This document shows, piece after piece, positions 8,842-40,351 of a stretch of 46,725 nucleotides of DNA (positions within the stretch are counted from its first letter, which is position 1; each line of letters starts with the position of its first letter). Origin of the DNA: Octopus sinensis (lineage: Eukaryota); assembly GCF_006345805.1 (NCBI RefSeq), contig NW_021834846.1, forward strand, positions 1 to 46,725, given 5' to 3'. Made by a program: the position numbers and the translations under genes. Under the pieces are notes generated by a model. The model was given only the letters and a program-made list of their open reading frames with translations, was not told where the DNA came from and did not search any database.

Positions 8842-9047
8842 TCAACTGAAGTCTGATAATAAACATTCAGCTGCCGTGTAACATTCGGTTTCGTCAAGAG
8901 CTTCTTTTAATGTTTGAGGTGTACGTTTCGCTGGATCGCAACCTCGAAACCATTTGAGAAGCATCTGAAAGCCTTGTTCCATAACACTGTACGAATGGTC
9001 AATCTTGATGATTTCCAGGTCATCTTGTGTAATATCTAATTCCCTTC
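8842..9047 (-). CDS. ANK-RING-DD gene, last coding exon (death domain, C-terminal part)
   Basis: Acceptor ttttgcag, phase 1. (G)RELDITQDDLEIIKIDHSYSVMEQGFQMLLKWFRGCDPAKRTPQTLKEALDETECYTAAECLLSDFS*, a death-domain pattern (EQxxxMLxxW...TxxxLxxAL). Confidence 0.88.
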
Positions 9048-11904
9048 CTGCAAAAGATACAATAAGAAATAATTGCAAAAGCATTAACGATAATATAAAA
9101 CCTGTGAACAGTAAATTATAGATCTGACAAAGAAATTATGTGAATAGACGAATGAGAAATACTGAAGAAAGACGGAAAATAGAAGACATTGTTATCTGTT
9201 TCTAAAGATTTTGAGAAAAATAAGAAACAAGTTGAAATAAAAGCTGGAATTGGAGAAAACATTTAAAGATCGAATAAAATTGAAAGTTATACATGACAAA
9301 TCTTCTGGTAAACAACTGGCAGGGGAAGTGTTTGTGTGGGCAGCAGTATACGAAAAGCTCAAGAATCAACAAAGACTACCAATAGTTACACCATTTCATC
9401 TATCCATTCAAATGCTTTGCCCTCTCTTCATAGGAGGGTTATAAGGGTAGAGTCCTCAGGCACCTCCTTCATACGATTCTATCTAAAGTAACCTTGATTA
9501 GAAATTCTGAGAGAATTTCCAAGCACAACCAATTGAAACTATGGTTTTTATGCAAAAATTTATTCTTGGTTTAGCCCCAGGTCTTCTGTCAGTTGGCTCA
9601 GCTCGATGAATCCCTCTTTTGATTCTTTCCTGAGACATTTTAATCACATGCCGGTAGTATTGGAGCAGCTGTGACCTCTCAATGCAGAGAAGCAGTCGTT
9701 TGACCTGGAGAGATACCCAAATTTCGAAGCTGCACGCGTTACTCCAGAGACTCCTCAGAGGAACTCAATTTCAGTCGTTTTAATAACATCCCATATTCAA
9801 AGACTGAAATAGTCATCTGTGATGTGGTCCCTCCTATGATTAGTAAATAATTAAAGATTATCAAAATTCAGAAATATCTCGAAAGTGGGGAATGACTTCA
9901 ACGGCACAAAGTAAAAATATAACACTGTTAGGTACATATCACATATTATAGAAGATACCAGCTGAAAAGTTAGTCTTGGAATACTGACTCCTAAAAAGGA
10001 ATTCCTTCACTGGCTGAAGGCCACAATTTCAAAAGAATCTCCTACAGGAGAGGCCCAAGAGTAAGCAAAGCAATGGGAAGAGTTTTAGTTTGTAGGCAAT
10101 AACAGAACATCTACACCATACACCTACAACACTTGGGTCCTGAAAGAATCCCTGCATCCTCAAACATCTACATCATCTGGAAAGTTATCACAATTTATAT
10201 GCAGGGGAGAGAAAAGGGGTTAATAGGAATTCTATATAGTATATCTAATGTACGCAATAGGTGCAGTGGTATCACAGGCAAGTTTACAGGGAGGACGGGT
10301 TAGGGTTGGGGAAGGACTTTTCAAGTAGCAGATACACGGGATTAGTTTGTAGTAAGAACAAGTATGAAAGACATATAGTTTCTCTAACCTAAGAGACATA
10401 ATTAGAAGTGGGTGGGTGGGGGTCTATTCTCAAAGTGCAGTACTTTGAGGAAAAATGGGATGGAAAATGTACAGGGAACTGTTATGTCTACTGGCAACTA
10501 AGGGATTCTGTCTCCAAATGAAGGAGAGATTGCATGAGGTGTATTTGTAAAGTGCAATGTTGCATTTAATGTAGAGGATGCAGGAAAACTGGCAAGAAAT
10601 GAGGTGAGCATACATCACTAGAAGTGTAATGTTAATGTGTTGAAAACCTGGGGTTAGGGAAAACTGGGTCTCAGAAGAATCTGTGATAGTGCACAATATA
10701 GTATAGATTTAGAAGGGATATGGTAAATGAAATTTGGATAAAGAAGTGCCTGGAATTCAAGTGGAAGAAAACAAGCGATTAAACCTGACAAACAACCACA
10801 ACGACTGTGGGAGAAGTCGTCTGACACATACAAACTTGGAGAAATGAACGTAAGATGTTGATTATATTGGACTGGTGTTAATGGATTGATTTTTACCCCA
10901 GTATATGACTGGTACATTTTGTATGACTGCCAGAGAAATAACAAATTAGCAATGTCACAAATGATGTCCTCTCTTAATTTAGATAAATCATTTCTATCAG
11001 CTGACTGAGGGGATAATGTTACGACCTCTTGAGTCAGGGGTGAAAGGTTCAAATCTAGTCCCCCCACACAGCTCAATGTTCTGGTAAAGACATCTCTCTT
11101 CTGGTTCAGTCTACGAACCACGATAGGGATATTGCTGTAAAAAATAGGAATATTGTATAAATGATATTTTATGTTGTTAAACTTTCAGACAAGAGGAAAT
11201 GGGATACTGTGATGTTCATGCCTTTCCAGTAAAGAAGAGTGAAATGATTTCAATTGATAAACAAAATCAAGTTGAGTTTGAAATTTCGGATGAGATTCTT
11301 TTTTTTAACGTGAGTTTCATTAATTTACAATACTGAGTTCAATCCAGCCATGGACACAGTCAACCATGGGGGACTGTTTTCTATAGAGACTGGCACTATA
11401 TATTGACCAGGGACTAAAGAACTACAATCAAAGAGAACACAGCATGTCACACATAATGCAAACTCTCGTGTTTAAAAAGGTTGCATTCGATAATGTGGTC
11501 CTCTTCATCCAAGAGAAAGAATGATGTCACATCTGGAAACCTTCCCTCTTAACTCTGCCAGATTAAAACAGATATCTGCCTCAGCAACAACAACAATAAC
11601 AACCAATCTGTGAACTTTCCAAAAACGTAAACAAACTAAAACATTGTCATTAACTCACCTGTTTAGTCTTTAACACCATTATTCTTGAGTCCCCTTTTAC
11701 AAACGACAATATTAACTCGTCTGTATCTTCTAATTCAAATATTTTACACCTGTGCTGACCTCGGTGGATATTTTATGAAATTTCAGTGATATCTTTACTT
11801 TATAGCTAAACTTTCAATTGGAAACTAGGAATGGAATCTGTTCTCAGTCAAAAGTTTAACTGAAAGCAAAATTTATAGAAATCAATTAGGTATTTTATAC
11901 TCAC

Positions 11905-11976
11905 CAAGTTGCTGCCATTTACCGGCCAACTTTTTGGACACCCGATGTAGATGCTTCACCTCTAGCGTTAGTATAT
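11905..11976 (-). CDS. ANK-RING-DD gene, 72-bp exon (death domain, N-terminal part)
   Basis: atttatttcag / GTGAGT, phase 1-1. (D)ILTLEVKHLHRVSKKLAGKWQQL(G) joins the last exon into a contiguous death domain. Confidence 0.87.
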
Positions 11977-14172
11977 CTGAAATAAATGTTTCCACATTTT
12001 ACACTTCATAGTATAATTTCCCTATCTCTGTTAATGGTTTATATCTTATTATTGTAAGACATTCCTATCATCAATGGCCAACTGCTGACCACTATAGGTT
12101 TCGTCGACAGTTTTATACTTTCTACAGTGGTCTTATAAAATGGCTCAATGTTTAGGTCCATAACAAAATAGACTGATCTTCCTAAACTTCCTTTTTCTAT
12201 TAAGACAACCTTCTTGATCTATCAATGTTGCATTCATCTCATTTAATTATCACATGTTAACACCTTTTATTTCTTTTCTTTTTTTATAGCTGGGCTAAAC
12301 CTATGAGATAGCATTGTTCCCTCATCAGTAGACTTCACTAATCCAGTGTTAACCATGCTGGTCATAAATGCTCTTGACACAAACTCATGTCATACCACTT
12401 GAAGTAGGATCAACACACACCTGTTTTCTTTGTTTTAACCTTTAATTTTATCTATGCAACTCACAGTTCACCAGAATTTCATCTGATTCATAAAATATTT
12501 TGAGACTCCTTAATGAAACCGCTTTCATTCCAGGTGAGCAATGATTAGTTTTACAGAGGTGAAACAGAAAGTGATAACAAGGGTCCTAAAACACTGTATA
12601 CTTGCACAAAACACCTTTAAAAACATGCAAATGTTTATACACAGATTATTGCAAAAGAAAAATATTTGAAAAGGTACAAAAGAAGTGATATTCAAGAATA
12701 TATAAACAAGATGGTGATATAGATCAAACTTCAAGCACCAAATCTTGTTTTTGCCCAGAAGTTTTGACTTGGCAAATGCTTATTGCCCATCCTCGGTTTC
12801 TGCAATGACATCAATGCCTCTACTCTTATTAGACAATGTGGGATTGTAGCATCGTCCTCAAGTTAATGTTTTAACTTTTGGCATAGTTTCTCCTATTATT
12901 TTGAACCTTACCTGTTTCTGTTGACCTTTGACATATGTCAGACTGCATCAAGTATTTGCTTTAGACAGCATTCTAGACCGAGTAATTAGTCCATCCAGTC
13001 TATCCAGAACTAATTGTATAAACATTTGATCTCTTCTTCTTATTTTTATGTCATCCATAAATGCCTTCTTAAGTGATTTCCCTTGAGTAATTTCTTCTGA
13101 TAAATCTGCCGATCCCCATAAAAGCATCCCCATAACAAGCGCAAACCAAGTAACGGATATTGTGCAATCTGCAGTTGTTCTAGTTCCAATGTTGGGCACA
13201 CGAAAATCTTTTTCTAGTGCTTTTGCCACATTAAAATGTACTCAGGACCCTTTATAAAGTGGTTGGTGTTAAGAAAGGCATACTACCATAGGAAAGGTGG
13301 AATGTTTAAGGGAGATGTGTTTCTCAAGCAATCGAGGTGGACAGTAATTCTGAATAAGGACATGGATAGTGACCACCCAGCCAATTCGATGATGAAGACA
13401 CTATAATCGATTGCATTGTATCTTGCACCCAATCTTGAGGAGAGAGAAAGAGAGCAATTGTCTCAGCAGAAGACCAAAGTCTCCTACTGGGATAAACACA
13501 ACGTTTAGGGGATGTAATGATAGATTTAATATCAGTGAAAAAAAGAGAGTGTGTTCACACTTGTAACAATTTTCAACTTAGTCACCTTGTTAAAAATGAC
13601 CGACAACAACAACAACAATTAGGAAACTTATTAAAATGTACAACAAACAAGCTCTCTCATTATCTCATCTGTTTTTGCCTTTAAACGACAAATTGCTTTC
13701 CTTTATTCCAAAGACAATATGAAGTCTGTTGTGTTTTCTAATTTAGCCATTTTACCAACAGCGCCAACACTGCTGGTCATTTTATTAAATTTCAAATCAG
13801 TAATATCAATGGGCTTGTAGATGCATCCATAGTAAGAGAGAGAGAGAGAGAGAAATGACAATATGGCAACGAGATGATAGAAAGTGAGAATATTCCCCTT
13901 AAGGGGAGCGAACCGCTTCAGGTTTTATATTTTATCTCTTGTATTTTTCCTTATCGTATGAGATCTTTTTCCTGTGTCTCATGTTTCCCTATTTCTGTAA
14001 AATCCATTTATTGGATATTCCTGCATTTGTAGTAGAACAGAATTACTTTGTAGCTAACCATTCGAATGAAATATAGCAATAGAACCGCTTCTCAGTGATT
14101 CACACAAATTATGTAGTTCAGGTGGAGGTAAAATTTGTAGAAGTCAATTAGATACAGTTATTTTATACTCAC

Positions 14173-14223
14173 CAAGTGGCTGAGCCTCTGTCTGGGATGC
14201 CTTGTCTTCAACCTTTGGACGCA
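14173..14223 (-). CDS. ANK-RING-DD gene, 51-bp linker micro-exon
   Basis: gtttatttcag / GTGAGT, phase 1-1, open: RPKVEDKASQTEAQPL. Confidence 0.75.
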
Positions 14224-14366
14224 CTGAAATAAACATTTCCAAGTTTTATACTTCATAGTAAAATTTCTTTATCTTTATGAATAATTCTGTATTTTATTAT
14301 TGTGAGACATTCATGTAATCAATGGTCAACTGGTGAGTAATATGGCTTTGGTCAGCATTTTTACAC

Positions 14367-14477
14367 TCTCTACCATGGGACCATGTAATATACCCAATAT
14401 ATAGGTCTGACCTTCCTCAATCTCTACCATGGGACCATGTAATATACCCAATATATAGACTGACCTTCCTCAATCTC
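14367..14477. repeat. 54-bp tandem duplication within module copy 2
   Basis: TCTCTACCATGGGACCATGTAATATACCCAATATATAG(GT)CTGACCTTCCTCAA at 14367 and 14421. Confidence 0.9.
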
Positions 14478-16075
14478 CTCTCACTATTAAGACATCCTAC
14501 ATAATCTAACAACATTGCACTTATCTCATTTAATAATCCCTTGTTAACACTGCTAATCTCTTTCTTATATTTAATCTAATCTATGACATGATTGTCCTCT
14601 CATCTCTAGACTTCACTAATCAACATTCTTCTCGTTTTCTACTTAATTCCATGACAACCAAATTGGTCCTCAAAAATCGGACCACAAAACCATGACACAT
14701 CATTTCAGGTAGGATAAACATAACCACGCTCTCTTTTTTAAAGGTCACTGTTGGCAATCTTTAATTTTAACTGACCACATCACACTTCATCAGAATATCA
14801 TCTGATTAAGGAAATGTCAATCATCCTCCTTAATAAGCGACTTTTTTCAGGTGAACAATGATTAGTTCTACACAGGTGGAGAGGTAAGCGATAACAGGTA
14901 TCCTGAAACACTGTACATTTGTACAAAACCTCCTTAACAACAAAATCACTGTTCATGTACAACACATTATTACAAAGAGGTTATATCCAAATTGAGAATT
15001 AACAATTTATTCTGAAGAATATATAAACAAAATCGAACTGGAAACATGAAATTTTGCATTGTTTTTAGTAGTTTTGAATTATCAGTTGTTTTCTGTCCAT
15101 CTTCAGCTTTGCCATGGTCTCACTGCCCCACCATATATCAGTCAACAAGATAGCGTACCACCATATTTAACTTTTGGTTTGTCTTTAACTTTTGGCATGA
15201 GTTCTCCTGCCGTTCGTAACTTCCCTTGCTCTAGCTGACCTCTCACAAATTATAGACTGCATTACTTATTTGTTTGAAACCACATTCTTGACTAAGTACT
15301 TACTCTATCGAGTCTACTAACCAGAACTATTTGCATATCCTTTTAGTCTCTTGTTAGTATTGTTATGTCAGCCATGAATATCTTTCCGTTGAGCAATTTC
15401 TTCTGGACATTCTGTTAATCTAATTAGCAAAACTATAAAGATCACCAACCAACTGATATTGTGCAACCTACAGTTATTCCAGATCCAGAACCTGGCAGTC
15501 TTTTGTGAAGTTTTATCCTATGAAACACATTTTGAAACTGTTATAGCATCTCCTCATCAGATCCTTAATCTCCTCCCATTTATGAAAGAAATTCCTTGTT
15601 TCCATCAACAATGTGTGTAGTACAGAACAATAAGCATTAGCCAGATCAAGCCATACTACATCCGAATCCCTTTTATTCTTCTTTGCTTTTTATATGGTAT
15701 CCCAGATTTAAAATACATGTTCTACACACACAGACATTCTCCGGATTCTAGTCTTCTGGATATTTTCAGTCATATAACTATCCTTTCTTCTTTCAACCCG
15801 TCCGATGTCTCTTTGAATGTATTTGATTGTATTGTATCATACAGCCTCTATGAAGTTTGAAGAAAAGGAAAGAGACAACGGTTTTCTGAGCAGCAAACCA
15901 ACGTCTTCCACTTGAATAAAGACAATGTTTACTGGATGCAATGATAGATTTATTATCAGTGAAAAATATGAGGGTGGTCATATTTGGAACCCGTTTCATT
16001 GCAAGTCTGCCAGATTATGAGAGACATCAGGTAAAATAACAAGAATATCTTGTCAGTAAACATTTAAAAAATACA

Positions 16076-16460
16076 GGCGTAGGAGTGGCTGTGTGGTAAG
16101 TATCTTGCTTACGAATTAGATGGTTCTGGGTTCAGTCCCACTGTGTGGCACCTTGGGCAAGTGTCTTCTACTATAGCCTCGAGCCAACCAAAGCCCGTCG
16201 TATGCATGTTGTATGTATGTATGTATATATGTATGTATGTATATATGTATGTATGTGTGTATGTGTTTGTCCTCCCAACATTGCTTGACAACCGGTGCTG
16301 GTGTGTTTCCGTCCCCGTACCATAGCAGTTTGGCTAAAGAGACAGATGGAATAAGTACTAGGCTTACAAAGAATAAATCCTAGGGTCAATTTGGTCGACT
16401 AAAAAGGTGGGGCTCCAGCATGGTGACAGTCAAATGACTGAACCGAGTAAAAGAGTATAA
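16076..16460 (+). mobile_element. tRNA-derived SINE, family 1
   Basis: Head GGAGTGGCTGTGTGGTAAG...GGTTCAGTCCC (A- and B-box-like), internal (TATG)n, tail CCAGCATGG..CAGTCAAATGACTGAA. Homologous copies lie at 34.4, 36.6 and 37.2 kb. Confidence 0.85.
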
Positions 16461-16763
16461 AACAAACAAAACCTTTGTCATTACTTCACCTGTTAAACCA
16501 CAACATATATTATTTGACTGTTCCAAAAGAGAACCTGAAATCTATTTTGCTTCTAATTTATCCATTTCACCAACCGTGCTAACCTGATTGGATACTTTAT
16601 GAAATGTCAATAGTATCGATATGTTTAATATGATTAGTTTAATGCTAAAACTTCCCATTGACAGGTAAGAATGGAAGCTGATCTTTATCATTCTGATATC
16701 AAAATAGTTCAGCAGAGAATAAACCTTACAGAAATCAATCAAGTGCTGTTATTTTATACTCAC

Positions 16764-16814
16764 CAACAGGTTCAGCCAGTGTCTGCATTTCCTTGTCTTC
16801 AAATGTTCGATTCA
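16764..16814 (-). CDS. ANK-RING-DD gene, 51-bp linker micro-exon
   Basis: attcatttcag / GTGAGT, phase 1-1, open: NRTFEDKEMQTLAEPV. Confidence 0.75.
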
Positions 16815-18515
16815 CTGAAATGAATATTTCCAAGTTTCAAACATTTAAAAAAAATTTCTCTATCTTTATTAATAATCTATATTTTATATCAGGGATTCCT
16901 TTCATAGATAATCAACTGTTGAAGACAATGGTTTTGGTTAGAATGTTTATAGTTTGAACAGGATTACCATGTAATAGTTTAATATTTACACTGCCTTCCA
17001 AAATTTCCTTTATCTTTTGAGACATTCGACATAATCTAACAACTGTGTCATTATTTCATTTAATTATCACTTGATAACACCAATCTTTGATTAGGTTTGT
17101 CTTTCCTTTCTTATATCTGCACTAAACATATGACGTGAAATTGTGCCCTCACTTCTGCCCTTCTCTAACCAACATTATTCTCAGCTTTGCTTAATTCCAA
17201 TGGCAACCAGTCTGGTTATCCATGATCTAACCATTAACACATTGCACACACCACTTTAAGTTGTATAAACACTCAAACCTGATCTCCTTCTTAAACATTA
17301 CTGCATGTAATGATTAGTTTTCAACTTCCTGCATCGCTGTTCACCAGAATGTCAGCTGATGCATGAAATGCTTTAAAACACCTTAATAGAGCAGTGTTTA
17401 TAAAGGTGAGTGAAGATTACTTCTACACAGGTGGAACAGAAAATGATAACAGGTGTCCTCAAAGAGGATACACTTGCACAAACTTCACTCTACTACAGGT
17501 AACTCTTCATCCTTACATTATAGCAGTGAAAAGATCTGAAATGGTAGAATGGAAGTGATTCTGAAAACTCTAGGATATCTCTGACAACCTTCTTCTATAT
17601 ATCAACCAAACTTTCGTCTCTCCTTTGATGTCCCCTTAATCAATGCGGTGCCTCTGAATGGGCTGAGAACTCAGTTCAATCAAATCTGAGGGGACGAAAT
17701 GGACACCTCTGTAGAAATATTTACCTGACAGAAACCATCTTCCTGATGTCGTAGGTAACAACATTACAAGAAATATGAAACCCTGCTCACACCCCATTCC
17801 ACCATCACTGTTTTACCACATTTGTCACTAATGATCATTGACGTCAACTAATTGAAAATGTTTCTAAAATGTTTTATAAAATGCATCTAATTAGTGTCAA
17901 ATACGTATACAGAAATGTTCCACAACATAGTGTTTCCTATGAAATGAAGCAAAAACACAATACCATCAAAACATACTGAAACATAGGGACGATAATCACA
18001 GTTCGTATGGATGTGGTCATGTAACCAAGGAAAATTGTAAAACTACAGAGAGTAATAAGGTGTAGGATGTTACTCGAAGATGCTAAGTTCTGTGGAGGTT
18101 CTACAGTTTGAGAAATGATCTACCTATGATAAGAATATTCACAATATACAATATGATATTTAGAGGCCTCTGAAACTCGTTCTGAGTGTAAAAATCGCGT
18201 TTTTGACAATTTTCAACTTGCCAGTTCACCATGTGTCCTATTCAACAATGGATCGAAACTTATTCTCCAAGATTGTATACATCTACACTTTATTCGTTCA
18301 AAATCTCAAAGTCTCTTCTTAACTTCTTCATAGTTAATTTTATTTTTCCAATATGTGCTTTTTAACAAAATTGCACAGTTCTCTGACAGAAATTTTATCA
18401 CACAAGGTCAATAAAAGTGACAGGACCAGCAATAGAACCTAAAGACGGACGAAATGCAGTTAAGTACGTTAACGATTCTGCCAGGGGTCACCTTATCTAT
18501 TATTTAATAATATTA

Positions 18516-18700
18516 AAGCGGCGAACTAGCAGAATCGGTGGCGCGCCGAACAAAATGCCGAGTGGCGTTTCGTCCGTCTTCACGTTCTGAGTTTAAAATT
18601 CCACCGAGGTTGTCTTTGCCTTTCATTTTTTCAGGGTAAATAAAATAAGTACCAGTTTTGTACTGGCGTCGATATACTCGCCTCATTTCCTCCCCTGAAA
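18516..18700 (+). mobile_element. tRNA-derived SINE, family 2
   Basis: GCGGCGAACTAGCAGAATCG...GTTCTGAGTTTAAAATTCCACCGAGGT...AATAAGTACCAG, matching a mollusc SINE layout from memory. Confidence 0.7.
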
Positions 18701-18969
18701 ATGATAACACAATATCAACAAAAGGGCAGATATAAACCTATTTGGTAAAAGGATCTTATTTTACATATAAAAATTTATATTTTAAATCATATTATTTTCA
18801 TACTGAAATGCTTATGGTATTAAAGTAAAACTCCTAATTACAATTTGAGATGTTATTGATTTACAATTCATTGATTACATATTAACAGACAATTATCTAA
18901 TTAGATCATAATTATACGTTTTTGTATTTTTGATTGTAAAAATAACATATTGTAAAAATAACATATTTT

Positions 18970-20600
18970 CAGGACCTTAACTTTGAAATATCTTGCTCAG
19001 ATGCTGGCCTCTCCTCACCTAAAAGAGTGAAATTGTCATCAGCTGATATCTTCTTCGTTAGAAGATCAGATCTTGAAGAAGGGACGAAGCGGTGATGGGA
19101 TCGTGTGCCAACTAATTTCACTGAGCTGCTGAATCGTGAAAGTAAGTCGAAGCTGTTTTCATTTCGGATGACATCGGCTGCCGACATGTCAAAGAACATT
19201 ACCTCTGGAATGCTTGCACATGCTCAGCCATACCCTTGCACCTTTGAGTGAAATGTATTTCCGTGGCTGTTAGACTTGCTTTTCAGCATTTCTTCATTAC
19301 TACACTTCCTACACTTTCATCCACTGATTCCCTCATATGTCCTTTTTTTCCACATGACATGGCAAGAAAAACTACACTCGCTTCAAGTCCTTGATCATTC
19401 TGATGATGACAGAGATTTGTTTGGCGTCTCTAGTTCTTGTATTGGTCGGTTGCACCGACACTGAAGTACAGGAGATGGTTTATGAATGGAAGTTCTGTCT
19501 TTATATGCGATATCACCCTCGTAATAAAAGCATGCACTATGGTGCTGTCTTGTTTCAAACAGGAATTACAACCGTGTTCCGTGGTCTGCTACCGCAACTG
19601 CTCCTTTATAGGATCCAGTTAGCTCAAGACATCATTAGGAGGAACCACGTCCTGTTTCGGCCCCTACTCCTCTACCGTTTTGACGTGGCGCCCCCCCCTT
19701 TCGGAGGTGTCTTCAGCTCTGGTGTTGGGTGCATGTCTTTCTTCTTCTTCTTTCTTCTGTTCCCTGACCTCTTCGATGTATCGTCAGCGAGTGTCAGCCG
19801 GTGACTGACTGTCTTGTCAAATCTTACACCCCAAATACCTGCCGGCAGGCTCCAGCGGGCAGCCCCAGCAAGTTGTCACGTGACACTATCTCACTTTAAC
19901 TGACTAGTGAAGGCGCGTAGTTTTAGCCCGCGCTTTTTCTAAACGACCGTCGCCGGTCAGTCAGCTTGTCTCACCTAATGATGTTATTTCCCGTCGGCGT
20001 GTTTATGACTTTCAAGCCATTTTCGGTCTTCCCGCTTCAGCCATATATAGAAGCTGGCTGTTTCGACCGCTTCCTGTACTCTCCTTATTAGTTTACGCAG
20101 CTCGGGGCTAGAAAAAAACAAATCTTCTTTTGAAAAGCGTTGTCATTTTCTTTTCAATGTAGCCTCTAGCCCCCACTGCCAGGTGATAATATTCGATATT
20201 CCATCCCTGTTCTCTGCATTCTTCAATTAGCTTTTCATACCTCTTCTCCTATGACACAGATTGAAGTGCATTGTGGGTTTGAACCTGTCTGATAACAGAT
20301 CGCGAATGGATGAATATATTGGCCTGGGAGTTGTTCCAATGAAACCCTTGCACCGAATCCTTCACTACAAAACTATAATTTTCTGCCAAGTCTGACAATA
20401 CTGTTGCTTGATTTGATGTCAGATCATCTTTCTGATGAATAAGGAGACTAGTTTGAGTCTTTGCTATGAAATGGGGTTGATGCAGAGTATCAAACACATT
20501 TTCAGCGGTTTGAAGGAAATCATTCACTGGGGAAGTTAGGCACATCAGGGCTGCCCAGTCCACATAAATCCTCGTTACTAAATCCTCTGAGTCAAAATCA
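18970..20600 (-). mobile_element. Decayed DNA-transposon transposase (tentatively Sola2-like), split by an insertion at ~19571-20250
   Basis: Collinear motifs: HFIAKTQ...VLSDLAENYSFVVKDSVQGFHWNNSQA (20.3-20.5 kb), LKQDSTIVHAF...YFSVGATDQYKN*...NLCHH..D...FLAMSCGK (19.36-19.56 kb), VGTRSHHRFVP (19.1 kb). The superfamily name is from recall. Confidence 0.72.
19571..20250 (-). mobile_element. 3' fragment of an RLE-type (R2/HERO-like) non-LTR element plus a GC-rich downstream segment
   Basis: RRYEKLIEECREQGWNIEYYHLAVGARGYIEKKM...LRKLIRRVQEAVETASFYIWLKREDRKW is the typical RLE C-terminus. Confidence 0.72.
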
Positions 20601-20639
20601 CGTGATTAAAATATGTCCAACACTTCAGTCCACTCAGCT

Positions 20640-21108
20640 GGCGAAAATATGTAATTTTACAGCGAAATAAATCAAAATCAAAATCGATCAACATCAATGG
20701 AAATTGTAGCTGTGATACCAGTGCCGGTGGTACGTACAAGAACCATCCGAACGTGGCCGTTGCCAGCCTCACCTGGCCCCCCGTGCCGGTGGTACGTAAA
20801 AGAGCCATCTGGACGTGGCCGTTGCCAGTGCCGCCCGTCTGACCTCTGTGCCGATGGAACGTAAAAAAGCACGATCCGATCGTGGCCGTTTGCCAGCCTC
20901 GTCTGACACCTGTGCCGGTAGCACGTAAAAAGCACCCACTACACTCACGGAGTGGTTGGCGTTAGGAAGGGCATCCCGCCGTATAAGCTTCGCCAGATCA
21001 GACTGGGCCTGGTGCAGCCTTCTGGCTTCCCAGACCCCAGTTGAACCGTCCAACCCATGCTAGCAGGGAAAGTGGACGCTAAATAATGATGATGATGAAT
21101 GATGATGA
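20640..21108 (+). mobile_element. RTE-type LINE 3' UTR fragment with internal ~50-60 bp repeats and a (GAT)n tail
   Basis: Four GTGCCGGTGG(T/C)ACGTAAAA-type units, GGTTGGCGTTAGGAAGGGCATCC, then ATGATGATG. A homologous 3' end follows the RTE ORF at 32.0-32.45 kb. Confidence 0.75.
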
Positions 21109-21222
21109 CTAGCGTCCTGTTCATGGAAGAATATATAAGCCGGGGGAACCGGGAAGCCAACCCTATGCTTCATATGGAGTAATATGGTCTAACATAATTA
21201 GGTACAGTTATTTTCTACTCAC

Positions 21223-21273
21223 CAGGTGGTTCTGCCAACATCTGGACTTCCGGCTTTGACGACTTTGGACCCT
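21223..21273 (-). CDS. ANK-RING-DD gene, 51-bp linker micro-exon
   Basis: gtttatttcag / GTGAGT, phase 1-1, open: (E)GPKSSKPEVQMLAEPP. Confidence 0.75.
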
Positions 21274-21736
21274 CTGAAATAAACAATTTCATGTTTTAAA
21301 CACTGTAGAAAAAAAGTCTTTATCATTATTAATAATCGATGTTTTATTATTGTTAGACAATCCTATCATCATTGATCAACTGGTGACCATCATGCTTTTG
21401 GAGAGCATTTGTATAATTTCTACAGTATTACAATGTAATTATTCAAAATTTAGGTCCACAACAGCATAAACTACACTTAACAACCCTTCTCTGTCTCTTA
21501 AGGCATCCAACAATTTTAACAATTCTGAAATTATCTCGTTTAATTATCCCCTAATAACAACAGATTTTCTCTTAGTTTCGTTTTGGTTTTCTTATGTTTG
21601 TTCCAGATCTTTGACAAGACATCGTCATTTCACCTCCAGAGATCTCTAATCAATATTCGTCTCATCTTCTGCTAAATTCAAATGTCAACCAAGTTGCGCA
21701 TCGAAGATCCAACCCCAAGCACGAAACACCACTTCA

Positions 21737-22613: not shown

Positions 22614-22756
22614 CCAAACTAATTTTGTTCGTTATATTCTGTCCACACTTGAGGCATTGTTTAGGTATCTTTTGGGGACAGCATTTCTTACACAGCGAAA
22701 GATGTTTACATGGAAAGAACGTCTCTGTGGCCACTTCGTCTTCACAAAACACACAT
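22614..22756 (-). CDS. ANK-RING-DD gene, RING-HC (C3HC4) exon
   Basis: gttcctcag / GTAAGA, phase 2-1. CVFC-x11-CKH-x3-CKKC-x8-CLKC (the extra Cys in CKKCC leaves the register slightly ambiguous). Confidence 0.9.
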
Positions 22757-23047
22757 CTGAGGAACAAAAACATGAACACATCCCATTAATAACATTCATT
22801 TATACAAATTTACATTGTGTGCATATTTACAGTAGAGAATATTATGCGAGACCACAATTAACAATTACATATGGGCGAATTTGTGAGTATATAAATGCAG
22901 ACACAGACACACAGACACAGACACAGATACACATATATATATATATAAATGGACACAAATATTAATAAGTATATGTCATGACATTGATACATCACAAAAA
23001 CTGATTTACGCAAAGTGAACAACATATATTCCAGAAATATAATTCAC

Positions 23048-23048
23048 T

Positions 23049-25073: not shown

Positions 25074-25609
25074 ATCTATGTATGCATGTATAAATACGTA
25101 TGTATGTATGTATCCATGTATGTATCTATGTATGCATGTATAAATACGTATGTATGTATGTATTCGTGTATGTACACTCATTGTATGTGTTTGTAGTGAT
25201 TTTCTCAGGATAGCTCACATGGACATGACTGGGTGGGACAGAGAAGACAGAGGAACAATCTATTGGTAGAGAGATAAATTCCATCACTTCACTATTTACT
25301 TCTACATTTTCTCATTGGTCCCAAATCTTTAAAATAGGGAACTGAGAGAGGTGGGTGGGATTTTAGGAGAGGTATAACAGTCAACACAACCAATCATTTG
25401 AATGTAATCAAAATAGTGTTCTTTCTTTAATTAGCTTAACAACTGCATATTGTTTATTGTTCTTCTTACTGTTGTTGTGTAACCTTTCCTTAAGCCACTA
25501 AGACAGTATAATGTATCAGTAGAATGAAAACAATATAAACATATAAACACGGTTATATACAAAACAGAAAATGTAATGGTTTATCTTGTCATTGCCAGTG
25601 AATACTTAC

Positions 25610-25788
25610 TGCGTTGGTCGGAATAACGTCTTTAACGTCTTTTTTAAATTTTCCTTTTCTATTAGGTCCAATGGTGTTCTGCCACTTTTGTTTTTACAGT
25701 AAAAGTTGGCCCCGTGGTGGGCTAGGTAACTGGCAACCACCACGCCAGAGTACCTTTCTTCGTTTCCCAGTTTCAGCTCTTCGCAGAA
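25610..25788 (-). CDS. ANK-RING-DD gene, last ankyrin exon (not in the ORF track)
   Basis: catttgtag / GTAAGT, phase 0-2. FCEELKLGNEERYSGVVVASYLAHHGANFYCKNKSGRTPLDLIEKENLKKTLKTLFRPT resembles the final Mind bomb ankyrin segment. Confidence 0.9.
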
Positions 25789-29277: not shown

Positions 29278-29487
29278 CTGATCTAACATGGTCATGTGCT
29301 CCACCTCAGAATTAAATTCTTTGGTTGCTAACGCCAGGTGCAGGCAATTATTTCCTCCATGGTTGAGAGCATTTACATTCGCACCCCTGGCTATCAGCCT
29401 CTGAATTATTCCGAGGTGACCGTTCGAAACAGCTTCAAGCAATGGTGTCCTATATTCTTTGTTCACAATTTCTAAATTCACCGAATC
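29278..29487 (-). CDS. ANK-RING-DD gene, ankyrin exon
   Basis: cctccacaaag / GTAAGT, phase 0-0, 70 codons: DSVNLEIVNKEYRTPLLEAVSNGHLGIIQRLIARGANVNALNHGGNNCLHLALATKEF... Confidence 0.9.
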
Positions 29488-30556: not shown

Positions 30557-32450
30557 TACAGGGAAGATGATGCCTTGGACGGGAAGAATTACAGAAGTAT
30601 CAAACTATTAGATGAAGCAATGAAAATTACTGAGAGGGTCACAGACAAAATAATTAGGATGTGTGTTAGACTAGAAGAGATGCAATTTGGTTTTGTGCCA
30701 CAGCGAAGAACCTCTGATGCTATATTCCTGGTAAGGCAGCTGCAGGAGAAGTACAAAGCCAAAGATAAACTCTTGTACTGGGCCTTTGTTAAACACGGAG
30801 AAAGGCTTTGACAGGATCCCTTGATCCCTTATTTGGCGGTCACTGCAAAAACTAGGGATGGACAAATGGTTGGTGAGAGCGTTACAAGTCATGTACAGGG
30901 ATGCTGTCAGTAAGGTGAGGTTTGGCATCGTGTGTAGCAATGAATTAGGGTACAAGTAGGGGTTCACCATGGATTAGTCCTTAGCTCCTTCCTGTTTCAG
31001 AGTCCAGGTCCTCCAGGCAATAGAGGGAATTTAAGATGAACTGCTTCTAGGAGATCCCCAATGCTGATGACCTTGTTATCATAGCCGAATAACTTTCAGA
31101 ACTAGGTAAATTTTAGGTATATCAGTAAGGACTAGAACCAAAGGACCCTAAACTTAGTCTAACAAAAACCAGTCTTGGTAAGTAGGAAAGCGGACAATTC
31201 ACAAATCCCCTTAGGAAGATGGCACTGTTCGATCTGTAGAAAAAGCGTAGGTAGGAAGTTCATAAGATGTGCCCAGTGTAAGGTATGGACACATAAGTGT
31301 TGCAGCAATATCAGAGGAAGGTTAACAGGGATAATAGTTTTTTCTGTTTGGAAGGTGCACAGGTACAATAAACAGCACAAATGTAGAGAAAATAGAGCCC
31401 ATCAATTGCCAGGTAAGTAAGCTACTGGGAGTTGATAGTTTCCGCTATCTAGGTGGCCAAGTCAGGAGTGTGGTTTGTTCTTCCTTGAGTGTAGCTGCAA
31501 GAATAAGAATAAGACGTGCAAAGTTCAGAGTGATCTTAACTCTAATGGTAACAAAGAGCGTCTCCCTGAGATTGAAAGGCAGACGTTATGATGCATGTGT
31601 GTAAACAACTATGTTACATGTCAGTGAAACATGGGATGTGACCTCTCTGAGGACTTCCATAGGCTTGAAAGAAATGAAGCCAGTATGCCTCGCTGGATGT
31701 ACAATCTCAGTGTGCATGTACGACAGAGTATAGGAATCTTGAGAGAAAAGCTGAGCATTGAAGACATCAAATAGGGTGTGCAAGAGAGACGTCTGCGTTG
31801 GTATGGTCTTGCGATGTGTATGGACATGGACAGCTGTGTCAAAAAGTGCCGATCTCTAACTGTGGAAGGATCCTTTGGAAGACGGAGACCCAAGAAGACT
31901 TTCGATGAGTTGATGAAGAATGATCTCCAACCGTTGGACATCATAGAGGAGATGACAAGTGACCGAGAGCCCTGGTGATATTCTCTGCGGGAGAGGACAT
32001 GTCAGGCCAAGTGACGATAAGGATGTGGTCGTGCCAGTGTCCTATAAGTGGCAGCCGTGCATCATAGCCGTGGCTGTTCGCTTCCGGTGCCATGTCAATG
32101 AAACCTGGGTATCATAGTTGTGGTCACCGATGGTGCCATGTAAATTGGCACCTGGGAATTATCGTCGTTGGTGGTGCCATTTAAATGGCAACCATCCGTG
32201 AATCGTAGTCGTGGCCATTGTCGGTGTCATGCAAGTGGCACCCGTGCCGGTGGCATGTGAAACGCCAATTACACACCAGGGGTGGTTGGCATTAGGAAGG
32301 ACATCAAGCTGTAGAAACTATGCCAAATCAGACAGGAACGTGGGGCAGCTCACCGACTCATAATCTCCTGTCAAACCAGCCGACACATGCCAGTATGGTG
32401 AGTGGATGTTAAATGATGATAATGATGACGATGATGGTGATGACGATGAT
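30557..32450 (+). mobile_element. 5'-truncated decayed RTE LINE (RT domain, PHD-like Cys/His motif, 3' UTR, (GAT)n tail)
   Basis: NYRSIKLL...EMQFGFVP...DAIFLVRQLQEK, VGVHHGLVLS, ADDL, CSICRK..CAQCKVWTHKCC, QERRLRWYG...GRRRPKKT. Confidence 0.9.
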
Positions 32451-35131: not shown

Positions 35132-35168
35132 CTGCTTCAGCATCGCACACACCACTTTATATTTTCGC
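35132..35168 (-). CDS. ANK-RING-DD gene, 37-bp micro-exon
   Basis: tactttcag / GTTAGT, phase 2-0. (E)RKYKVVCAMLKQ is exactly the phase bridge needed between the flanking ankyrin exons. Confidence 0.82.
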
Positions 35169-35590: not shown

Positions 35591-36147
35591 ACACAATTTA
35601 TTTTCTTCAAAAGTAATAAGAAACAAGAACTGGAGAAAAGAAGGAAGACAGTTTATTAAAGGAACCCCTGGGTATTACTGGTACAGATTATATTGACCCC
35701 AGAGTGATAGTAAATATTCTGGTAGGATTTGAACATGGAACATAAAAGAGACAAATGTAAATACTGTAAGGGGATGATTCTGTATTTAGCCCAGGGTCGG
35801 AATAAATAGGGAAACTACAAGGAGAGAGAGTGAGGAAGAAAGAGAGAAAGAGAGAGAAAGTAGTTATAGATGGGATGAAAGGAAGAAGAGAGAGGATTTG
35901 AACCTGTGACGTTGAGGAAATGGAGAACGAGATGAAGTAAAGTGTCCAGTCAGGCAACAACAATAACAATTATGGTGATGATTAATTAATAAAGTAGATT
36001 ACAGTGTTATTTCAGTGCGAAAGAGAGAAGAAAGACAATGACCCCATGGTGGGATTATGACATAAATGACTGAATGAAAAAGAAACAAACATTATTGAAA
36101 ACATAAAAGAAACAGATTTGGATATTCCAGATCCAATGGGGACTTAC

Positions 36148-36302
36148 TCCCGAACTGCCTCATGCAGTGGTGTGTCTCCATTGTTGTCCACAACATTGGC
36201 ATCGATGCCATTGTGACCCAACAAAATGTCGACAATGTGCAAGTATCCCCGTGAACAGGCCACGTGCAGCGGTGTGCGACCATCTTCATTTCGAGGATTA
36301 AC
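36148..36302 (-). CDS. ANK-RING-DD gene, ankyrin exon (the ORF track shows the wrong frame)
   Basis: ctttatcag / GTAAGT, phase 0-2. VNPRNEDGRTPLHVACSRGYLHIVDILLGHNGIDANVVDNNGDTPLHEAVR. Confidence 0.92.
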
Positions 36303-37593: not shown

Positions 37594-37629
<36 letters not shown>

Positions 37630-37847: not shown

Positions 37848-37886
<39 letters not shown>

Positions 37887-37992: not shown

Positions 37993-38042
<50 letters not shown>

Positions 38043-38519: not shown

Positions 38520-38565
38520 CTCACTGCCCCGAGATAGTAAGATCTCCACAGGATGAGGTTCATCA
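38520..38565 (-). CDS. ANK-RING-DD gene, 46-bp micro-exon
   Basis: ttttactctcag / GTAAGT, phase 2-0. (C)DEPHPVEILLSRGSE completes the ankyrin repeat begun in the upstream exon. Confidence 0.87.
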
Positions 38566-38631
38566 CTGAGAGTAAAAGATAGAAACATTGATTAATTTAC
38601 ATTAAATATGAAAATATTTTGGCTTTGAGAC

Positions 38632-39081
38632 GAAACATTATCGTCATCATCATCATCATCATTATCACCTGCACTATTATCATCCATATCATGCTCATCA
38701 ACATCATTACCATCATCATCATTGCCACCACCTCCATCATTGACAAAATCATCATCATCATCATCGCCATCATCATCATCGCCATCATCGCCATCATCAT
38801 CATCGCCATCATCATCATCACCATCTTCATCACCTGCACTATTATCATCAATATCATGTTCATCAACATCATTACCATCATCATCATTGCCACCACCTCC
38901 ATCATTGACATAATCATCATCATCATCATCATCAGAGCCTTCATCATCATCACCCTCATTGCCAACACCATCATCATCATTATCATCTTCGACATCTCCA
39001 ATATCATCATAATCAATATCATCATCATCATCATCATCATTATCATCATCATCATCATCATCATCATCACCATCATCATCG

Positions 39082-39117
<36 letters not shown>

Positions 39118-40005
39118 ACACCATCATCAACAGCAAGATCAACCTCATCAATATCATCATCATCATAATCATTATCATCATCATCATCATAATAATAACA
39201 TCATAATCATCATCATCATCATCGTCATCATCACGATATCATCATAATCATCGTCGTCATCATCATCTCATCAAACATCATCGACATCATCATCATCATC
39301 ATTATCATCACCATCATCATCATCATCATTATTATCAACATCTTCATCATCTTCATCATCGTCGTTATCATCATCATCATCATCATGGTCGTCATCATCA
39401 TCATTATCGTCATCATCATCATAATCATCATCATCACCATCACCATCATCATCTTCATTATCGTCGTTATCATGATCATCATCATCATAATCATCATCAT
39501 CATCAACACCATCACCTTCATCAGCTTCATCATCGTGGTTATCATCGTCATCATCATAATCATCATCATCATCGTCGTTATCATCATCATCATCATTATC
39601 ATTATCATCATCATCATCAACATCATCATAATCATCATTGTTGTTATCCTCATCATCGTCGTTATCATTATCATCAGTATAATCATAATCATCATCATCA
39701 TCGTCATCATCCCCCTCATTGCCACCACCATCGTCTTCATCATCATTCGTCGCCACTATAATCATAATCAACATCATCAGCGACATCATATAATCATCAT
39801 CATCATCATCATCACCATCATCGCCTCCATCATCAACAACATCAACAACACCATCATCATGATCGACATCATCATCATCACCACCTCCATCATTATCATC
39901 AACATCATCAACAACATCATCATGATGGTCGACATCATCAATACCGTCATCGTCATCATCATCGCCGTTATCATCATCATCATCGGGATTGTTATGATTG
40001 AATAA
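38632..40005. repeat. ~1.4-kb degenerate (ATC)n microsatellite
   Basis: Continuous ATC/CAT triplets, which generate the poly-Ile, poly-Met and poly-Asp ORFs. Confidence 0.95.
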
Positions 40006-40193
40006 TGACTAATGAATTGGATCGATGACTAAAGAGAAGCTTGTTGTTGTTGTTGTTGTTTGCTAGTCTGCTGTTGTGCTGTTGTCCCACTGCCCTTTTC
40101 TATGGCATCTTTGGATATTGAACCTGTGTCTGCAATTGCAACAAATTTACAAACAAAAACACATCTGCAGATTTTACTTGATTCTCAACTTAC

Positions 40194-40351
40194 CAAATCA
40201 CAGCCAAATGCAAAGCTGTCTCACCCCATCGGTCTTTCGCTCCGACCTGGCCTCCTGCGTCTATCAAAATGTCGATGATTCTTCTATCGGCGCCCACTTC
40301 AGAGGCCAACATTAAAGGAGTTCGTCCCAACCAATCACTAGGTTTATTAAT
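40194..40351 (-). CDS. ANK-RING-DD gene, most 5' exon found (gene incomplete at the 5' end)
   Basis: ttcattacag / GTAAGT, phase 0-2. INKPSDWLGRTPLMLASEVGADRRIIDILIDAGGQVGAKDRWGETALHLAVI. No upstream exon was found within the window. Confidence 0.9.

What the first reader, a model, noticed from the sequence alone, without database searches (positions are those of the whole stretch)
8842..40351. Mind bomb-derived ANK-RING protein whose C-terminal RINGs are replaced by a death domain
Seen: 12 GT-AG exons splice in frame into 452 aa (ankyrin repeats, one RING, a 3-exon linker, a death domain), and several exons are missed or mis-framed by the ORF track. Knowledge (from memory): ...SYLAHHGANFYCKNKSGRTPLDL...NLKKTL followed by CVFC..FFPCKH..C..C....CLKC tracks the MIB1 segment CFLAANGADL..RNKKGQSPLDL...NLCKAL and RING1 CMVC..LFGPCGH..C..C...CLIC, including the insertion before the last ankyrin repeat. 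MIB1/2 end in further RINGs, not a death domain, although mammalian MIB2 acts on the death-fold proteins RIPK1 and cFLIP. Inference: this is a lineage-specific fusion that links a MIB-type scaffold to death-domain (Toll/IMD/TNFR/PIDDosome-type) signalling, possibly one member of an expanded cephalopod immune family. I do not know this architecture from characterised proteins.
Basis: partly seen in the sequence, partly recalled or inferred. Interest (0 to 1): 0.85.

Follow-up and report, generated by a model that had tools for sequence, protein, structure and literature searches.

The report
Octopus Mind-bomb-2 offshoot carrying a death domain
This is a real, already auto-annotated octopus gene whose protein keeps the middle of the Mind bomb 2 ubiquitin ligase (ankyrin repeats and the first RING finger) and ends in a death domain; it belongs to a large family found so far only in Octopus, and its function is untested.

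Summary
Twelve GT-AG exons on the minus strand (40351/40375 to 8842) splice in frame. From the ATG at 40375 they give 460 aa, identical to RefSeq XP_029656974.1 ('MIB2-like isoform X2', Octopus sinensis). The window is a whole unplaced scaffold of that genome.

Pfam and AlphaFold/Foldseek confirm ankyrin repeats, one C3HC4_3 RING, a disordered linker and a six-helix death domain.

The Mind bomb origin is well supported, and points to MIB2 rather than MIB1:
- family sub-profiles score far higher on cephalopod and mollusc MIB2 than on generic ankyrin proteins;
- the insertion in the last repeat and a 2-aa RING1 insertion are shared;
- three intron positions and phases are shared.

Intermediate architectures exist in Octopus.

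Every RING+DD relative whose source I looked up was from Octopus sinensis, O. vulgaris or O. bimaculoides. I found no paper on the family.

The main caveat is functional. The protein lacks Mind bomb's substrate-binding MZM/REP region and its terminal RING, the only catalytic RING in MIB1. E3 activity is therefore uncertain, and an immune role is untested.

Verdict: a new variant built from known domains, of moderate interest.

The parts
40194..40375 (-). Coding exon 1 (ankyrin repeat 1). RefSeq starts at the ATG at 40375.
   Evidence: In paralogue P0011 the homologous exon is exon 2, preceded by a 28-aa first exon. No such exon is found upstream in the window.
38520..38565 (-). Exon 2 (46 nt, second helix of ankyrin repeat 2)
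   Evidence: AG/GT flanks; phase 2 in.
36148..36302 (-). Exon 3 (ankyrin repeats 3-4)
35132..35168 (-). Exon 4 (37 nt, 'RKYKVVCAMLKQ')
29278..29487 (-). Exon 5 (210 nt, phase 0-0): an ankyrin repeat plus the start of the MIB-type insertion ('KEFNSEVEHMTMLDQ')
   Evidence: Same length, position and phases as an exon of the Octopus MIB2-like gene P0237 (L006 45829-46038).
25610..25788 (-). Exon 6 (179 nt, phase 0 to 2): rest of the insertion and the last, split ankyrin repeat ('VVVASYLAHHGANFYCKNKSGRTPLDL...')
   Evidence: The family sub-profile of this region scores 63.7 bits on full-length Octopus MIB2, against 30 bits or less on generic ankyrin proteins. The homologous exon in L006 has the same phases.
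22614..22756 (-). Exon 7: the RING finger (C3HC4_3; homologue of Mind bomb RING1)
   Evidence: Pfam PF13920, 28.3 bits. All Zn ligands are invariant or nearly so in the paralogue alignments. A 2-aa insertion between Cys6 and Cys7 is shared with cephalopod MIB2.
21223..21273 (-). Exon 8, linker unit 1 (51 nt, phase 1-1)
   Evidence: Disordered in the AF2 model, pLDDT 33-48.
16764..16814 (-). Exon 9, linker unit 2 (51 nt, phase 1-1). Cassette exon: present in RefSeq isoforms X1 and X2, skipped in X3.
14173..14223 (-). Exon 10, linker unit 3 (51 nt, phase 1-1)
11905..11976 (-). Exon 11: first death-domain exon (helix 1). It lies in the same tandem genomic repeat unit as linker exons 8-10.
   Evidence: exon plus intron flanks about 73% identical among the four units.
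8842..9047 (-). Exon 12: rest of the death domain (helices 2-6) and the stop codon
   Evidence: Pfam Death 27.7 bits. AF2 gives six helices at pLDDT 89.5. The best 41 Foldseek PDB matches are all death domains.

Best explanation
WHAT IT IS (about 0.9 confidence). This is an intact Octopus sinensis gene, one member of a large family seen only in Octopus. The family descends from the cephalopod Mind bomb 2 (MIB2) gene. It has lost the N-terminal MZM/REP substrate-binding region and the C-terminal RING. It kept the ankyrin array and RING1, and gained a two-exon death domain at the C-terminus. The death domain is joined by a disordered linker built from tandemly duplicated 51-nt phase-1 exons, one of which is alternatively spliced.

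HOW IT MOST LIKELY WORKS (inferred; about 0.45).
- The death domain docks the protein into homotypic death-domain oligomers. The likeliest partners are other members of the Octopus-expanded DD subtype that it most resembles: small DD proteins that RefSeq names 'RIPK1', and an adhesion GPCR with a cytoplasmic DD.
- The concave face of the ankyrin array binds a client protein.
- The RING recruits an E2 to ubiquitinate components of that assembly. The flexible, splice-variable linker sets the reach.

Shown here: gene structure, domains, folds, descent from MIB2, family expansion. Inferred: DD-DD docking (general property of death domains), client binding by the ankyrin array, and E3 activity.
For: GENE MODEL
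- The model equals RefSeq XP_029656974.1.
- The same exon plan (RING exon, 51-nt linker exons, a 75-nt and a 204-nt DD exon) occurs in paralogue P0011.

DOMAINS
- Pfam.
- AF2 full-length model, pLDDT 86, with ANK above 90, RING 76-82, linker below 50, DD 92-96.
- The DD-only model matches AnkG, RIPK1, TRADD, RAIDD and FADD death domains at TM 0.74-0.79. Sequence hits agree.

MIB2 DESCENT
- The best non-family matches to the last-ANK+RING profile are Mind bomb proteins carrying the MIB SH3-repeat domain.
- Sub-profile scores fall in a gradient: Octopus MIB2 63.7/52.6 bits, probable other cephalopod 54.0/49.8, bivalve and gastropod MIB2 46-58/23-26, generic ankyrin proteins 30 or less/about 0.
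- The helical insertion in the last repeat and the 2-aa RING1 insertion are shared.
- Three introns share position and phase, and one exon has the identical 210-nt length.
- NJ tree: the family plus Octopus ANK-RING proteins group at 97% bootstrap, next to the Octopus MIB2 clade.
- Intermediate architectures exist: REP-ANK-RING1-RING2 (P0237), ANK-RING1-RING2 (P0150), ANK-RING1 (P0145).

CONSTRAINT
- Zn ligands and DD core residues are invariant or nearly so across 13-32 paralogues whose mean column identity is 34-52%.
- A hydrophobic residue precedes Cys2 in 89 of 91 family RINGs. Some paralogues carry the canonical CP[IM]CR E2-contact motif.
Against: - In MIB1, ubiquitin transfer relies solely on RING3. 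Purified ANK-RING1-2 does not autoubiquitinate with UbcH5B, and ANK, RING1 and RING2 are dispensable in the Notch assay (PMC10925295). The octopus family keeps the part without demonstrated activity.
- The window's own RING reads CLKCG where active RINGs have CP[IVM]CR. The RING Pfam score is only just above the cut-off.
- No expression, interaction or activity data are available.
- The true 5' end is uncertain.
- No transcript-derived contig for this gene was found in the collections.
Confidence: 0.5

Rival explanations
1. The gene and its origin are as above, but the protein is a non-catalytic adaptor or decoy. The RING is only a structural zinc module, or a regulatory element as proposed for MIB1 RING1/2. 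The protein would act by occupying or bridging death-domain assemblies through its DD and ankyrin array, for example as a dominant-negative regulator.
For: - MIB1 ANK-RING1-2 has no autoubiquitination activity, and deleting RING1 and RING2 together slightly raises MIB1 signalling output.
- The window protein lacks the Pro/Ile/Arg E2-contact triad: CLKCG.
- The 2-aa insertion lies in the segment before Cys7 that contributes to the E2 groove.
Against: - All eight Zn ligands, the Pro before Cys3 and a hydrophobic residue before Cys2 are kept across a family that is otherwise only 34-52% identical per column.
- A subset of paralogues has the full CPICR/CPMCR motif typical of active RINGs.
Confidence: 0.35
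2. The gene model is an annotation chimera. ANK-RING and linker-DD would be two neighbouring genes, or alternative transcripts, joined by the predictor and by the first reader.
For: - ANK-RING-only and linker-DD-only predicted proteins exist in the family. P0141 (132 aa) starts inside a linker-type exon. In my local set, 45 family entries score as ANK+RING without a DD.
- I could not retrieve direct transcript evidence for this locus.
Against: - The fusion is predicted independently in three Octopus genome annotations and in dozens of paralogues.
- All phases fit, and no in-frame start codon is needed.
- Paralogue P0011 has the same exon order at its own locus.
- Many of the short forms lie on small scaffolds or are flagged partial.
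Confidence: 0.05
3. This copy is a young, decaying duplicate: 5'-truncated and without function of its own.
For: - The exon homologous to the first coding exon of paralogue P0011 is absent from the window. The annotated ATG lies in what looks like a polypyrimidine tract plus CAG acceptor.
- The gene sits on a 46.7-kb unplaced scaffold flanked by simple repeats.
- Introns carry transposon debris.
Against: - All 12 exons are open, and all splice sites are canonical.
- Every family-invariant residue is retained.
- Paralogue P0002 has the same MSSLSSLQINKP start.
- The missing exon may simply lie beyond the scaffold end.
Confidence: 0.08

Closest known systems
Mind bomb 2 (MIB2; and more distantly MIB1) RING E3 ligases
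   Same: - The ankyrin array ends in a split last repeat with a helical insertion, followed by a TPLD(L/I) motif and RING1 (zf-C3HC4_3).
- It shares the cephalopod-specific 2-aa RING1 insertion.
- It shares three intron positions and phases with an Octopus MIB2-like gene.
   Different: - No MIB/HERC2-ZZ (MZM) domain and no SH3-repeat (REP) domain.
- No 20-30 aa spacer before RING1.
- No terminal RING, which in MIB1 carries all the ubiquitin-transfer activity.
- Ends in a death domain instead.
cIAP1/2 (BIR-CARD-RING) and mollusc BIR-DD-RING IAPs (BIRC2/3-like, 'BIRC11'; PMC8917759)
   Same: One polypeptide combines a death-fold domain with an IAP/MIB-type C3HC4_3 RING. The best PDB sequence matches of the RING are cIAP2, CGRRF1, cIAP1 and XIAP. 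DD+RING IAPs are described in oysters.
   Different: There is no BIR domain. The domain order is reversed (RING then DD, instead of DD/CARD then a C-terminal RING). The RING is not at the C-terminus, so the tail-mediated dimerisation of IAP RINGs is not expected.
Ankyrin-repeat plus death-domain proteins (ankyrins R/B/G, ANKDD1, DAPK1, NF-kB p100/p105/Relish)
   Same: Ankyrin repeats lie N-terminal to a C-terminal death domain. The ankyrin-G DD is the top sequence and fold match of this DD.
   Different: There are no ZU5-UPA, kinase/ROC or Rel-homology domains. A RING lies between the ANK and DD regions. The ankyrin array is of MIB2 origin, not ankyrin origin.
RIPK1 / TRADD / RAIDD death domains
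   Same: The DD matches these at TM 0.74-0.79 and 18-27% identity, with sequence E about 2e-4 to 2e-2. RefSeq names small Octopus proteins with the same DD subtype 'RIPK1'.
   Different: Identity is low and no orthology is implied. No kinase, RHIM or TRADD-N domain is present. Matches to the MyD88/IRAK/Pelle/Tube DDs are clearly weaker.

Membership tests
Mind bomb E3 ligases (MIB1/MIB2) | N-terminal MZM (MIB/HERC2-ZZ-MIB/HERC2) and REP (Mind bomb SH3 repeat) substrate-binding region | tested here: not met
   Pfam scan of the 460-aa product finds no PF06701, PF00569 or PF18346. These domains are found in Octopus MIB2 P0285 and in P0237/P0201.
Mind bomb E3 ligases (MIB1/MIB2) | Ankyrin array ending in an atypical repeat with a helical insertion, followed by RING1 | tested here: met
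   Collinear alignments. The sub-profile scores 46-64 bits on mollusc MIB2 against 30 or less on generic ankyrin proteins. Introns are shared. The MIB1 ANK structure 8v0e is among the best natural fold matches, TMq 0.49.
Mind bomb E3 ligases (MIB1/MIB2) | C-terminal catalytic RING (ccRING3 in MIB1, last RING in MIB2) | tested here: not met
   Only one RING is present. The C-terminus is a death domain. In MIB1 the terminal RING is solely responsible for ubiquitin transfer.
Death domain (DD subfamily of the death-fold superfamily) | Six-helix antiparallel bundle matching PF00531 above the curated threshold | tested here: met
   PF00531 27.7 bits against a cut-off of 22.6. AF2 gives six helices at pLDDT 89.5. 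The best 41 Foldseek PDB matches are all death domains; the few CARD matches appear only far down the list.
Death domain (DD subfamily of the death-fold superfamily) | Homotypic oligomerisation through type I/II/III interfaces | not testable with these tools
   No multimer prediction or binding assay was available.
RING-type E3 ubiquitin ligases (C3HC4_3 / IAP-MIB type) | Eight Zn ligands with cross-brace spacing | tested here: met
   The pattern is CxxC-x12-CxH-x3-CxxC-x8-CxxC in exon 7. PF13920 scores 28.3 bits against a cut-off of 27. The ligands are invariant or nearly so in the paralogue alignments.
RING-type E3 ubiquitin ligases (C3HC4_3 / IAP-MIB type) | E2-contact residues (hydrophobic residue before Cys2; Pro and Ile/Val/Met between Cys7 and Cys8; Arg/Lys after Cys8) and ubiquitin-transfer activity | tested here: inconclusive
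   The window protein has F before Cys2 but CLKCG at Cys7-Cys8. Paralogues vary from CLKCG to CPICR/CPMCR. Activity cannot be tested here. The homologous RING1 of MIB1 is inactive with UbcH5B.
Inhibitor-of-apoptosis proteins (BIR-DD/CARD-RING) | At least one BIR domain | tested here: not met
   No BIR domain in the Pfam scan.
Canonical ankyrins (ANK-ZU5-UPA-DD) | ZU5-UPA supramodule between the ANK and DD regions | tested here: not met
   No ZU5 or UPA domain in the Pfam scan. The region between RING and DD is a disordered linker of about 50 aa.

The most novel reading that the evidence does not exclude
The family could be the cytoplasmic arm of an Octopus-specific receptor-adaptor system. Dozens of ANK-RING-DD paralogues with variable ankyrin arrays and splice-variable linkers would be recruited, through a private DD subtype, to DD-bearing receptors such as the LRR-GPS-7TM-DD adhesion GPCR (P0179) or to small 'RIPK1-like' DD proteins. 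There they would ubiquitinate or sequester clients. That would be a lineage-specific death-domain signalling network, possibly in innate immunity, built from the functionally obscure middle part of Mind bomb. It would also assign a function to the ANK-RING1 module.
Probability: 0.15. Interest if true: 0.7.

Novelty: new variant of a known kind. Interest (0 to 1): 0.45.

Why it matters
If the protein is functional, it shows how a conserved Notch/TNF-pathway ligase can be taken apart and re-used. Octopus kept the ANK-RING1 segment, which is dispensable in MIB1 assays, multiplied it into dozens of genes, and wired it to death-domain assemblies by exon shuffling.

This offers a natural experiment on what ANK-RING1 does. 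It also adds a candidate lineage-specific signalling family to cephalopods, whose innate immune repertoire is poorly known.

The significance is limited for three reasons:
- Lineage-specific death-domain architectures are common in invertebrate genomes.
- The gene is already auto-annotated.
- Nothing is known about its expression or activity.

Tried and rejected
- Joining the five obvious ORF-derived exons directly: exon 1 to exon 3 is out of frame, which led me to the short exons 2 and 4.
- Exon 3 ending at 36147: the donor is one base earlier, at 36148|GT.
- Full-length PDB sequence and fold searches: swamped by generic ankyrin and DARPin hits, with MIB1 ANK 8v0e only among them, so not decisive alone. 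I replaced them with sub-profiles and controls.
- The 2-aa RING1 insertion as a unique marker: other lineages (Gigantopelta, one Logan cluster) have independent 3-aa insertions at the same loop. It is supportive, not conclusive.
- dN/dS against the closest paralogue: P0002's locus is not on record. P0285's locus was also unavailable.
P0193 comes from assembly GCA_054771915.1 and P0286 from run SRR29271461, and I could not identify either species.
I used isoform X3 (P0001) instead.
- Literature searches for the architecture, or for octopus MIB2-like genes, found nothing relevant.
- Rfam and tRNA scans of the window were empty.
Full report
WHAT THE WINDOW IS. A protein search with a draft of the obvious exons returned, as best hit, a 448-aa RefSeq protein. 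It is named 'E3 ubiquitin-protein ligase MIB2-like isoform X3 [Octopus sinensis]', and its only contig is 46,725 bp long, the length of the window. The window is therefore a whole unplaced scaffold of the O. sinensis assembly. Both ends are strongly strand-skewed simple repeats.

THE OBSERVATION. I rebuilt the gene from the raw sequence. The twelve minus-strand exons are:
- 40375 (or 40351)-40194
- 38565-38520
- 36302-36148
- 35168-35132
- 29487-29278
- 25788-25610
- 22756-22614
- 21273-21223
- 16814-16764
- 14223-14173
- 11976-11905
- 9047-8842

All introns are GT-AG and all phases fit. The 460-aa product is identical to XP_029656974.1, isoform X2. Isoform X1 (465 aa) and X3 (448 aa) add 'FLFLR' before the RING, through an acceptor that is not AG in the genome. 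X3 also skips exon 9.

DOMAINS AND FOLDS.
- Pfam finds ankyrin repeats (E about 1e-35), one zf-C3HC4_3 RING (28.3 bits, cut-off 27; aa 269-312) and a Death domain (27.7 bits, cut-off 22.6; aa 376-454).
- An AlphaFold2 model of isoform X3, built with 31 paralogues as alignment, has mean pLDDT 86. The ankyrin array is above 90, the RING 76-82, the linker 33-48 (disordered) and the C-terminal six-helix bundle 92-96.
- A separate model of the DD alone (pLDDT 89.5) matches only death domains through rank 41 in the PDB. These include ankyrin-G, RIPK1, TRADD, RAIDD, FADD and TNFR1 at TM 0.72-0.79. MyD88, IRAK4 and Pelle/Tube match clearly worse, and the few CARD matches sit far down the list.
- Sequence search agrees: ankyrin-3 DD, RIPK1 DD and TRADD DD at E about 1e-4 to 1e-3.

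The death domain is genuine. It belongs to the DD subfamily proper, without close orthology to any characterised DD.

IS THE ANK-RING PART MIND BOMB-DERIVED? Yes, and specifically from MIB2. The evidence is as follows.

1. Profile search. I searched a profile of the last ankyrin repeat + RING + linker + DD, built from 13 paralogues, against 1.84 billion representative proteins. Outside the family, the proteins matching both the last-repeat and the RING parts are Mind bomb proteins. P0201, P0237 and P0234 carry the Mind bomb SH3-repeat domain. P0239 is annotated mib1-like; P0229 carries only a generic ankyrin-repeat name but aligns as MIB1-like.
2. Score gradient. With sub-profiles, the 'insertion + last repeat' model scores:
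   - 63.7 bits on full-length Octopus MIB2 (P0285, which has MIB_HERC2, ZZ, SH3_15, ANK and RINGs);
   - 54.0 on P0286, a transcript contig 77% identical to Octopus MIB2 and 68% to a bivalve MIB2, so probably from another cephalopod;
   - 46-58 on bivalve and gastropod MIB2;
   - at most 30 on generic ankyrin proteins, which match only one repeat's worth of columns.
   
   The RING model scores 52.6 and 49.8 on the two cephalopod MIB2s, 22-26 on other MIB2s, and about 0 on generic ankyrin proteins.
3. Alignments. They are collinear through the penultimate repeat, a roughly 25-aa insertion (family 'FHSEvEh..LD', Octopus MIB2 'VGSESEHSQVLD'), the split last repeat, a TPLD(L/I) motif and RING1. 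The MIB1 structure paper describes this atypical repeat with an extended helix (PMC10925295).
4. RING1 insertion. A 2-aa insertion between Cys6 and Cys7 is shared by the family, all Octopus MIB2-clade proteins and P0286. It is absent from MIB2 of other molluscs, a brachiopod, arthropods, amphioxus, fishes and echinoderms, and from MIB1-like proteins. Two other lineages have independent 3-aa insertions there, so this is supportive rather than unique.
5. Shared introns. Three consecutive introns have the same position and phase in the window gene and in the O. bimaculoides MIB2-like gene P0237. One pair of exons has the identical length of 210 nt.
6. Tree. A neighbour-joining tree of this region groups the family with Octopus ANK-RING proteins (97% bootstrap) beside the Octopus MIB2 clade. 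The all-Octopus clade has 52% support.

A SERIES OF ARCHITECTURES. Octopus contains a graded series:
- MZM-REP-ANK-RING1-RING2 (P0285)
- REP-ANK-RING1-RING2 (P0237)
- ANK-RING1-RING2 (P0150)
- ANK-RING1 (P0145)
- ANK-RING1-linker-DD (this family)

HOW THE DD WAS ATTACHED. Exons 8, 9 and 10 (51 nt each, phase 1-1) and exon 11 (72 nt, DD helix 1) sit in tandem genomic repeat units spaced 2.2-4.5 kb apart. In these units the exon and its intron flanks are about 73% identical. The linker therefore grew by tandem duplication of a unit that also contains the first DD exon. Paralogues carry different numbers of these units, and one has a second copy resembling DD exon 1.

The same DD subtype occurs in Octopus on other scaffolds:
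- an LRR-GPS-7TM adhesion GPCR (P0179; 99 bits with the family DD model). A DD on one O. bimaculoides adhesion GPCR was noted in PMC6408891;
- small DD-only proteins that RefSeq names 'RIPK1'.

DISTRIBUTION.
- A word-indexed search with the RING-DD half found 43 proteins, all from O. sinensis, O. vulgaris or O. bimaculoides.
- In the exhaustive profile search, 55 cluster representatives score below 1e-30. Every protein combining the family RING with a DD whose name or source I could look up is from those three species.
- In my local set, 67 protein entries (isoforms included) have last-ANK + RING + DD.
- Many O. vulgaris members have consecutive accession numbers on one 12-Mb scaffold. Many O. 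sinensis members lie on small unplaced scaffolds like this one. Both fit a tandem cluster that is hard to assemble.
- The collection does hold at least one probable non-Octopus cephalopod MIB2 (P0286) but no non-Octopus ANK-RING-DD protein among the best 150. Coverage of other cephalopods is unknown, so 'Octopus-only' is provisional.
- Four literature searches found no paper on this family.

WHAT IT PROBABLY DOES. Two published results limit inference from Mind bomb.
- In MIB1, ubiquitin transfer relies solely on the terminal RING3. Purified ANK-RING1-2 does not autoubiquitinate, and ANK, RING1 and RING2 are dispensable for Notch-ligand activation (PMC10925295).
- Mammalian MIB2 binds oligomeric RIPK1 through its N-terminal MZM region (PMC5912950).

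The octopus protein has neither MZM/REP nor the terminal RING. It keeps the least understood middle of Mind bomb.

Signs of constraint on the RING:
- The Zn ligands, the Pro before Cys3 and a hydrophobic residue before Cys2 (89 of 91 family RINGs) are conserved in a family that is otherwise divergent.
- Some paralogues have the canonical CPICR/CPMCR E2-contact motif.

Signs against an active RING in this copy: the window's RING reads CLKCG.

My best guess is a protein docked by its DD into death-domain oligomers, with the ankyrin array holding a client and the RING recruiting an E2 (about 0.45). The main rival is the same protein acting without catalysis, as an adaptor or decoy (about 0.35). 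An annotation chimera (0.05) and a decaying 5'-truncated duplicate (0.08) are less likely, for the reasons given under rivals. An immune role is plausible by analogy with other expanded invertebrate DD families, but it is untested.

THE 5' END. Paralogue P0011 has a 28-aa first exon ('MDINEIMKKIFSGDIEAVKIFITEHPDE') followed by an exon beginning 'INQ...'. That second exon is homologous to the window exon beginning at 40351, 'INK...'. The RefSeq ATG at 40375 lies in 'TCCTCACTTTCTTCATTACAG', which looks like a 3' splice site. No homologue of the first exon is present in the 6.3 kb of simple repeats upstream. The real N-terminus needs transcript data.

VERDICT.
- The evolutionary interpretation is correct, and is sharpened to MIB2.
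- The gene is already annotated automatically but uncharacterised.
- I rate it a new variant of a known kind, with moderate interest (0.45).

Noticed in passing
window 11830-21440 (minus strand): Linker exons 8, 9 and 10 and the first death-domain exon (11) lie in four tandem genomic repeat units spaced 2.2-4.5 kb apart. Exon plus intron flanks are about 73% identical, so the disordered linker appears to have grown by duplicating the unit that also holds DD exon 1.
   Followed up: partly
window 22757-22771 and 25609-25610: RefSeq isoforms X1 and X3 insert 'FLFLR' before the RING. The join needs an intron ending in AT or TG, not AG, so these isoforms look like prediction artefacts. Isoform X2 uses the canonical AG at 22758-22757.
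   Followed up: partly
window 40352-40375 and upstream to 46725: The annotated start codon sits inside a polypyrimidine tract plus CAG that looks like a 3' splice site. Paralogue P0011 (L001 10001-10084) has an extra 28-aa first exon, which is absent from this scaffold.
   Followed up: partly
window 1-6000, 38600-40000 and 40400-46725: Long, strongly strand-skewed simple-repeat arrays (GC skew +0.6 to +0.8 at the left end, -0.7 to -0.8 at the right end). They produce long spurious ORFs of poly-S/L, or of poly-M, poly-I and poly-D in different frames of the 38600-40000 trinucleotide repeat array. They probably explain why the scaffold is unplaced.
   Followed up: no
window 23884-24624 (minus) and 30575-30811 (plus): Transposon debris inside introns: a stop-interrupted Tc1/mariner-type transposase remnant (Sleeping Beauty-type HTH, below the Pfam cut-off) and a short reverse-transcriptase fragment (RVT_1, below the cut-off).
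   Followed up: partly
P0179 (Octopus bimaculoides XP_014788728.1), residues 1203-1277: An LRR-GPS-7TM adhesion GPCR carries a C-terminal death domain of the same Octopus-specific subtype as this family (99 bits with the family DD model). It is a candidate DD partner or donor.
   Followed up: partly
P0285, P0286 and the family RINGs (alignments): Cephalopod MIB2 RING1 has a 2-aa insertion between Cys6 and Cys7 ('LKIMIKKC') that MIB2 of the other sampled phyla lacks. Gigantopelta and one unnamed cluster have independent 3-aa insertions at the same loop.
   Followed up: yes
L004 (GCA_054771915.1, BAAFZT010000022.1), protein P0193: A 267-aa protein with a death domain scoring 87 bits on the family DD model comes from a different genome assembly, whose species I could not identify. 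It may show that the DD subtype exists outside the three named Octopus species.
   Followed up: no
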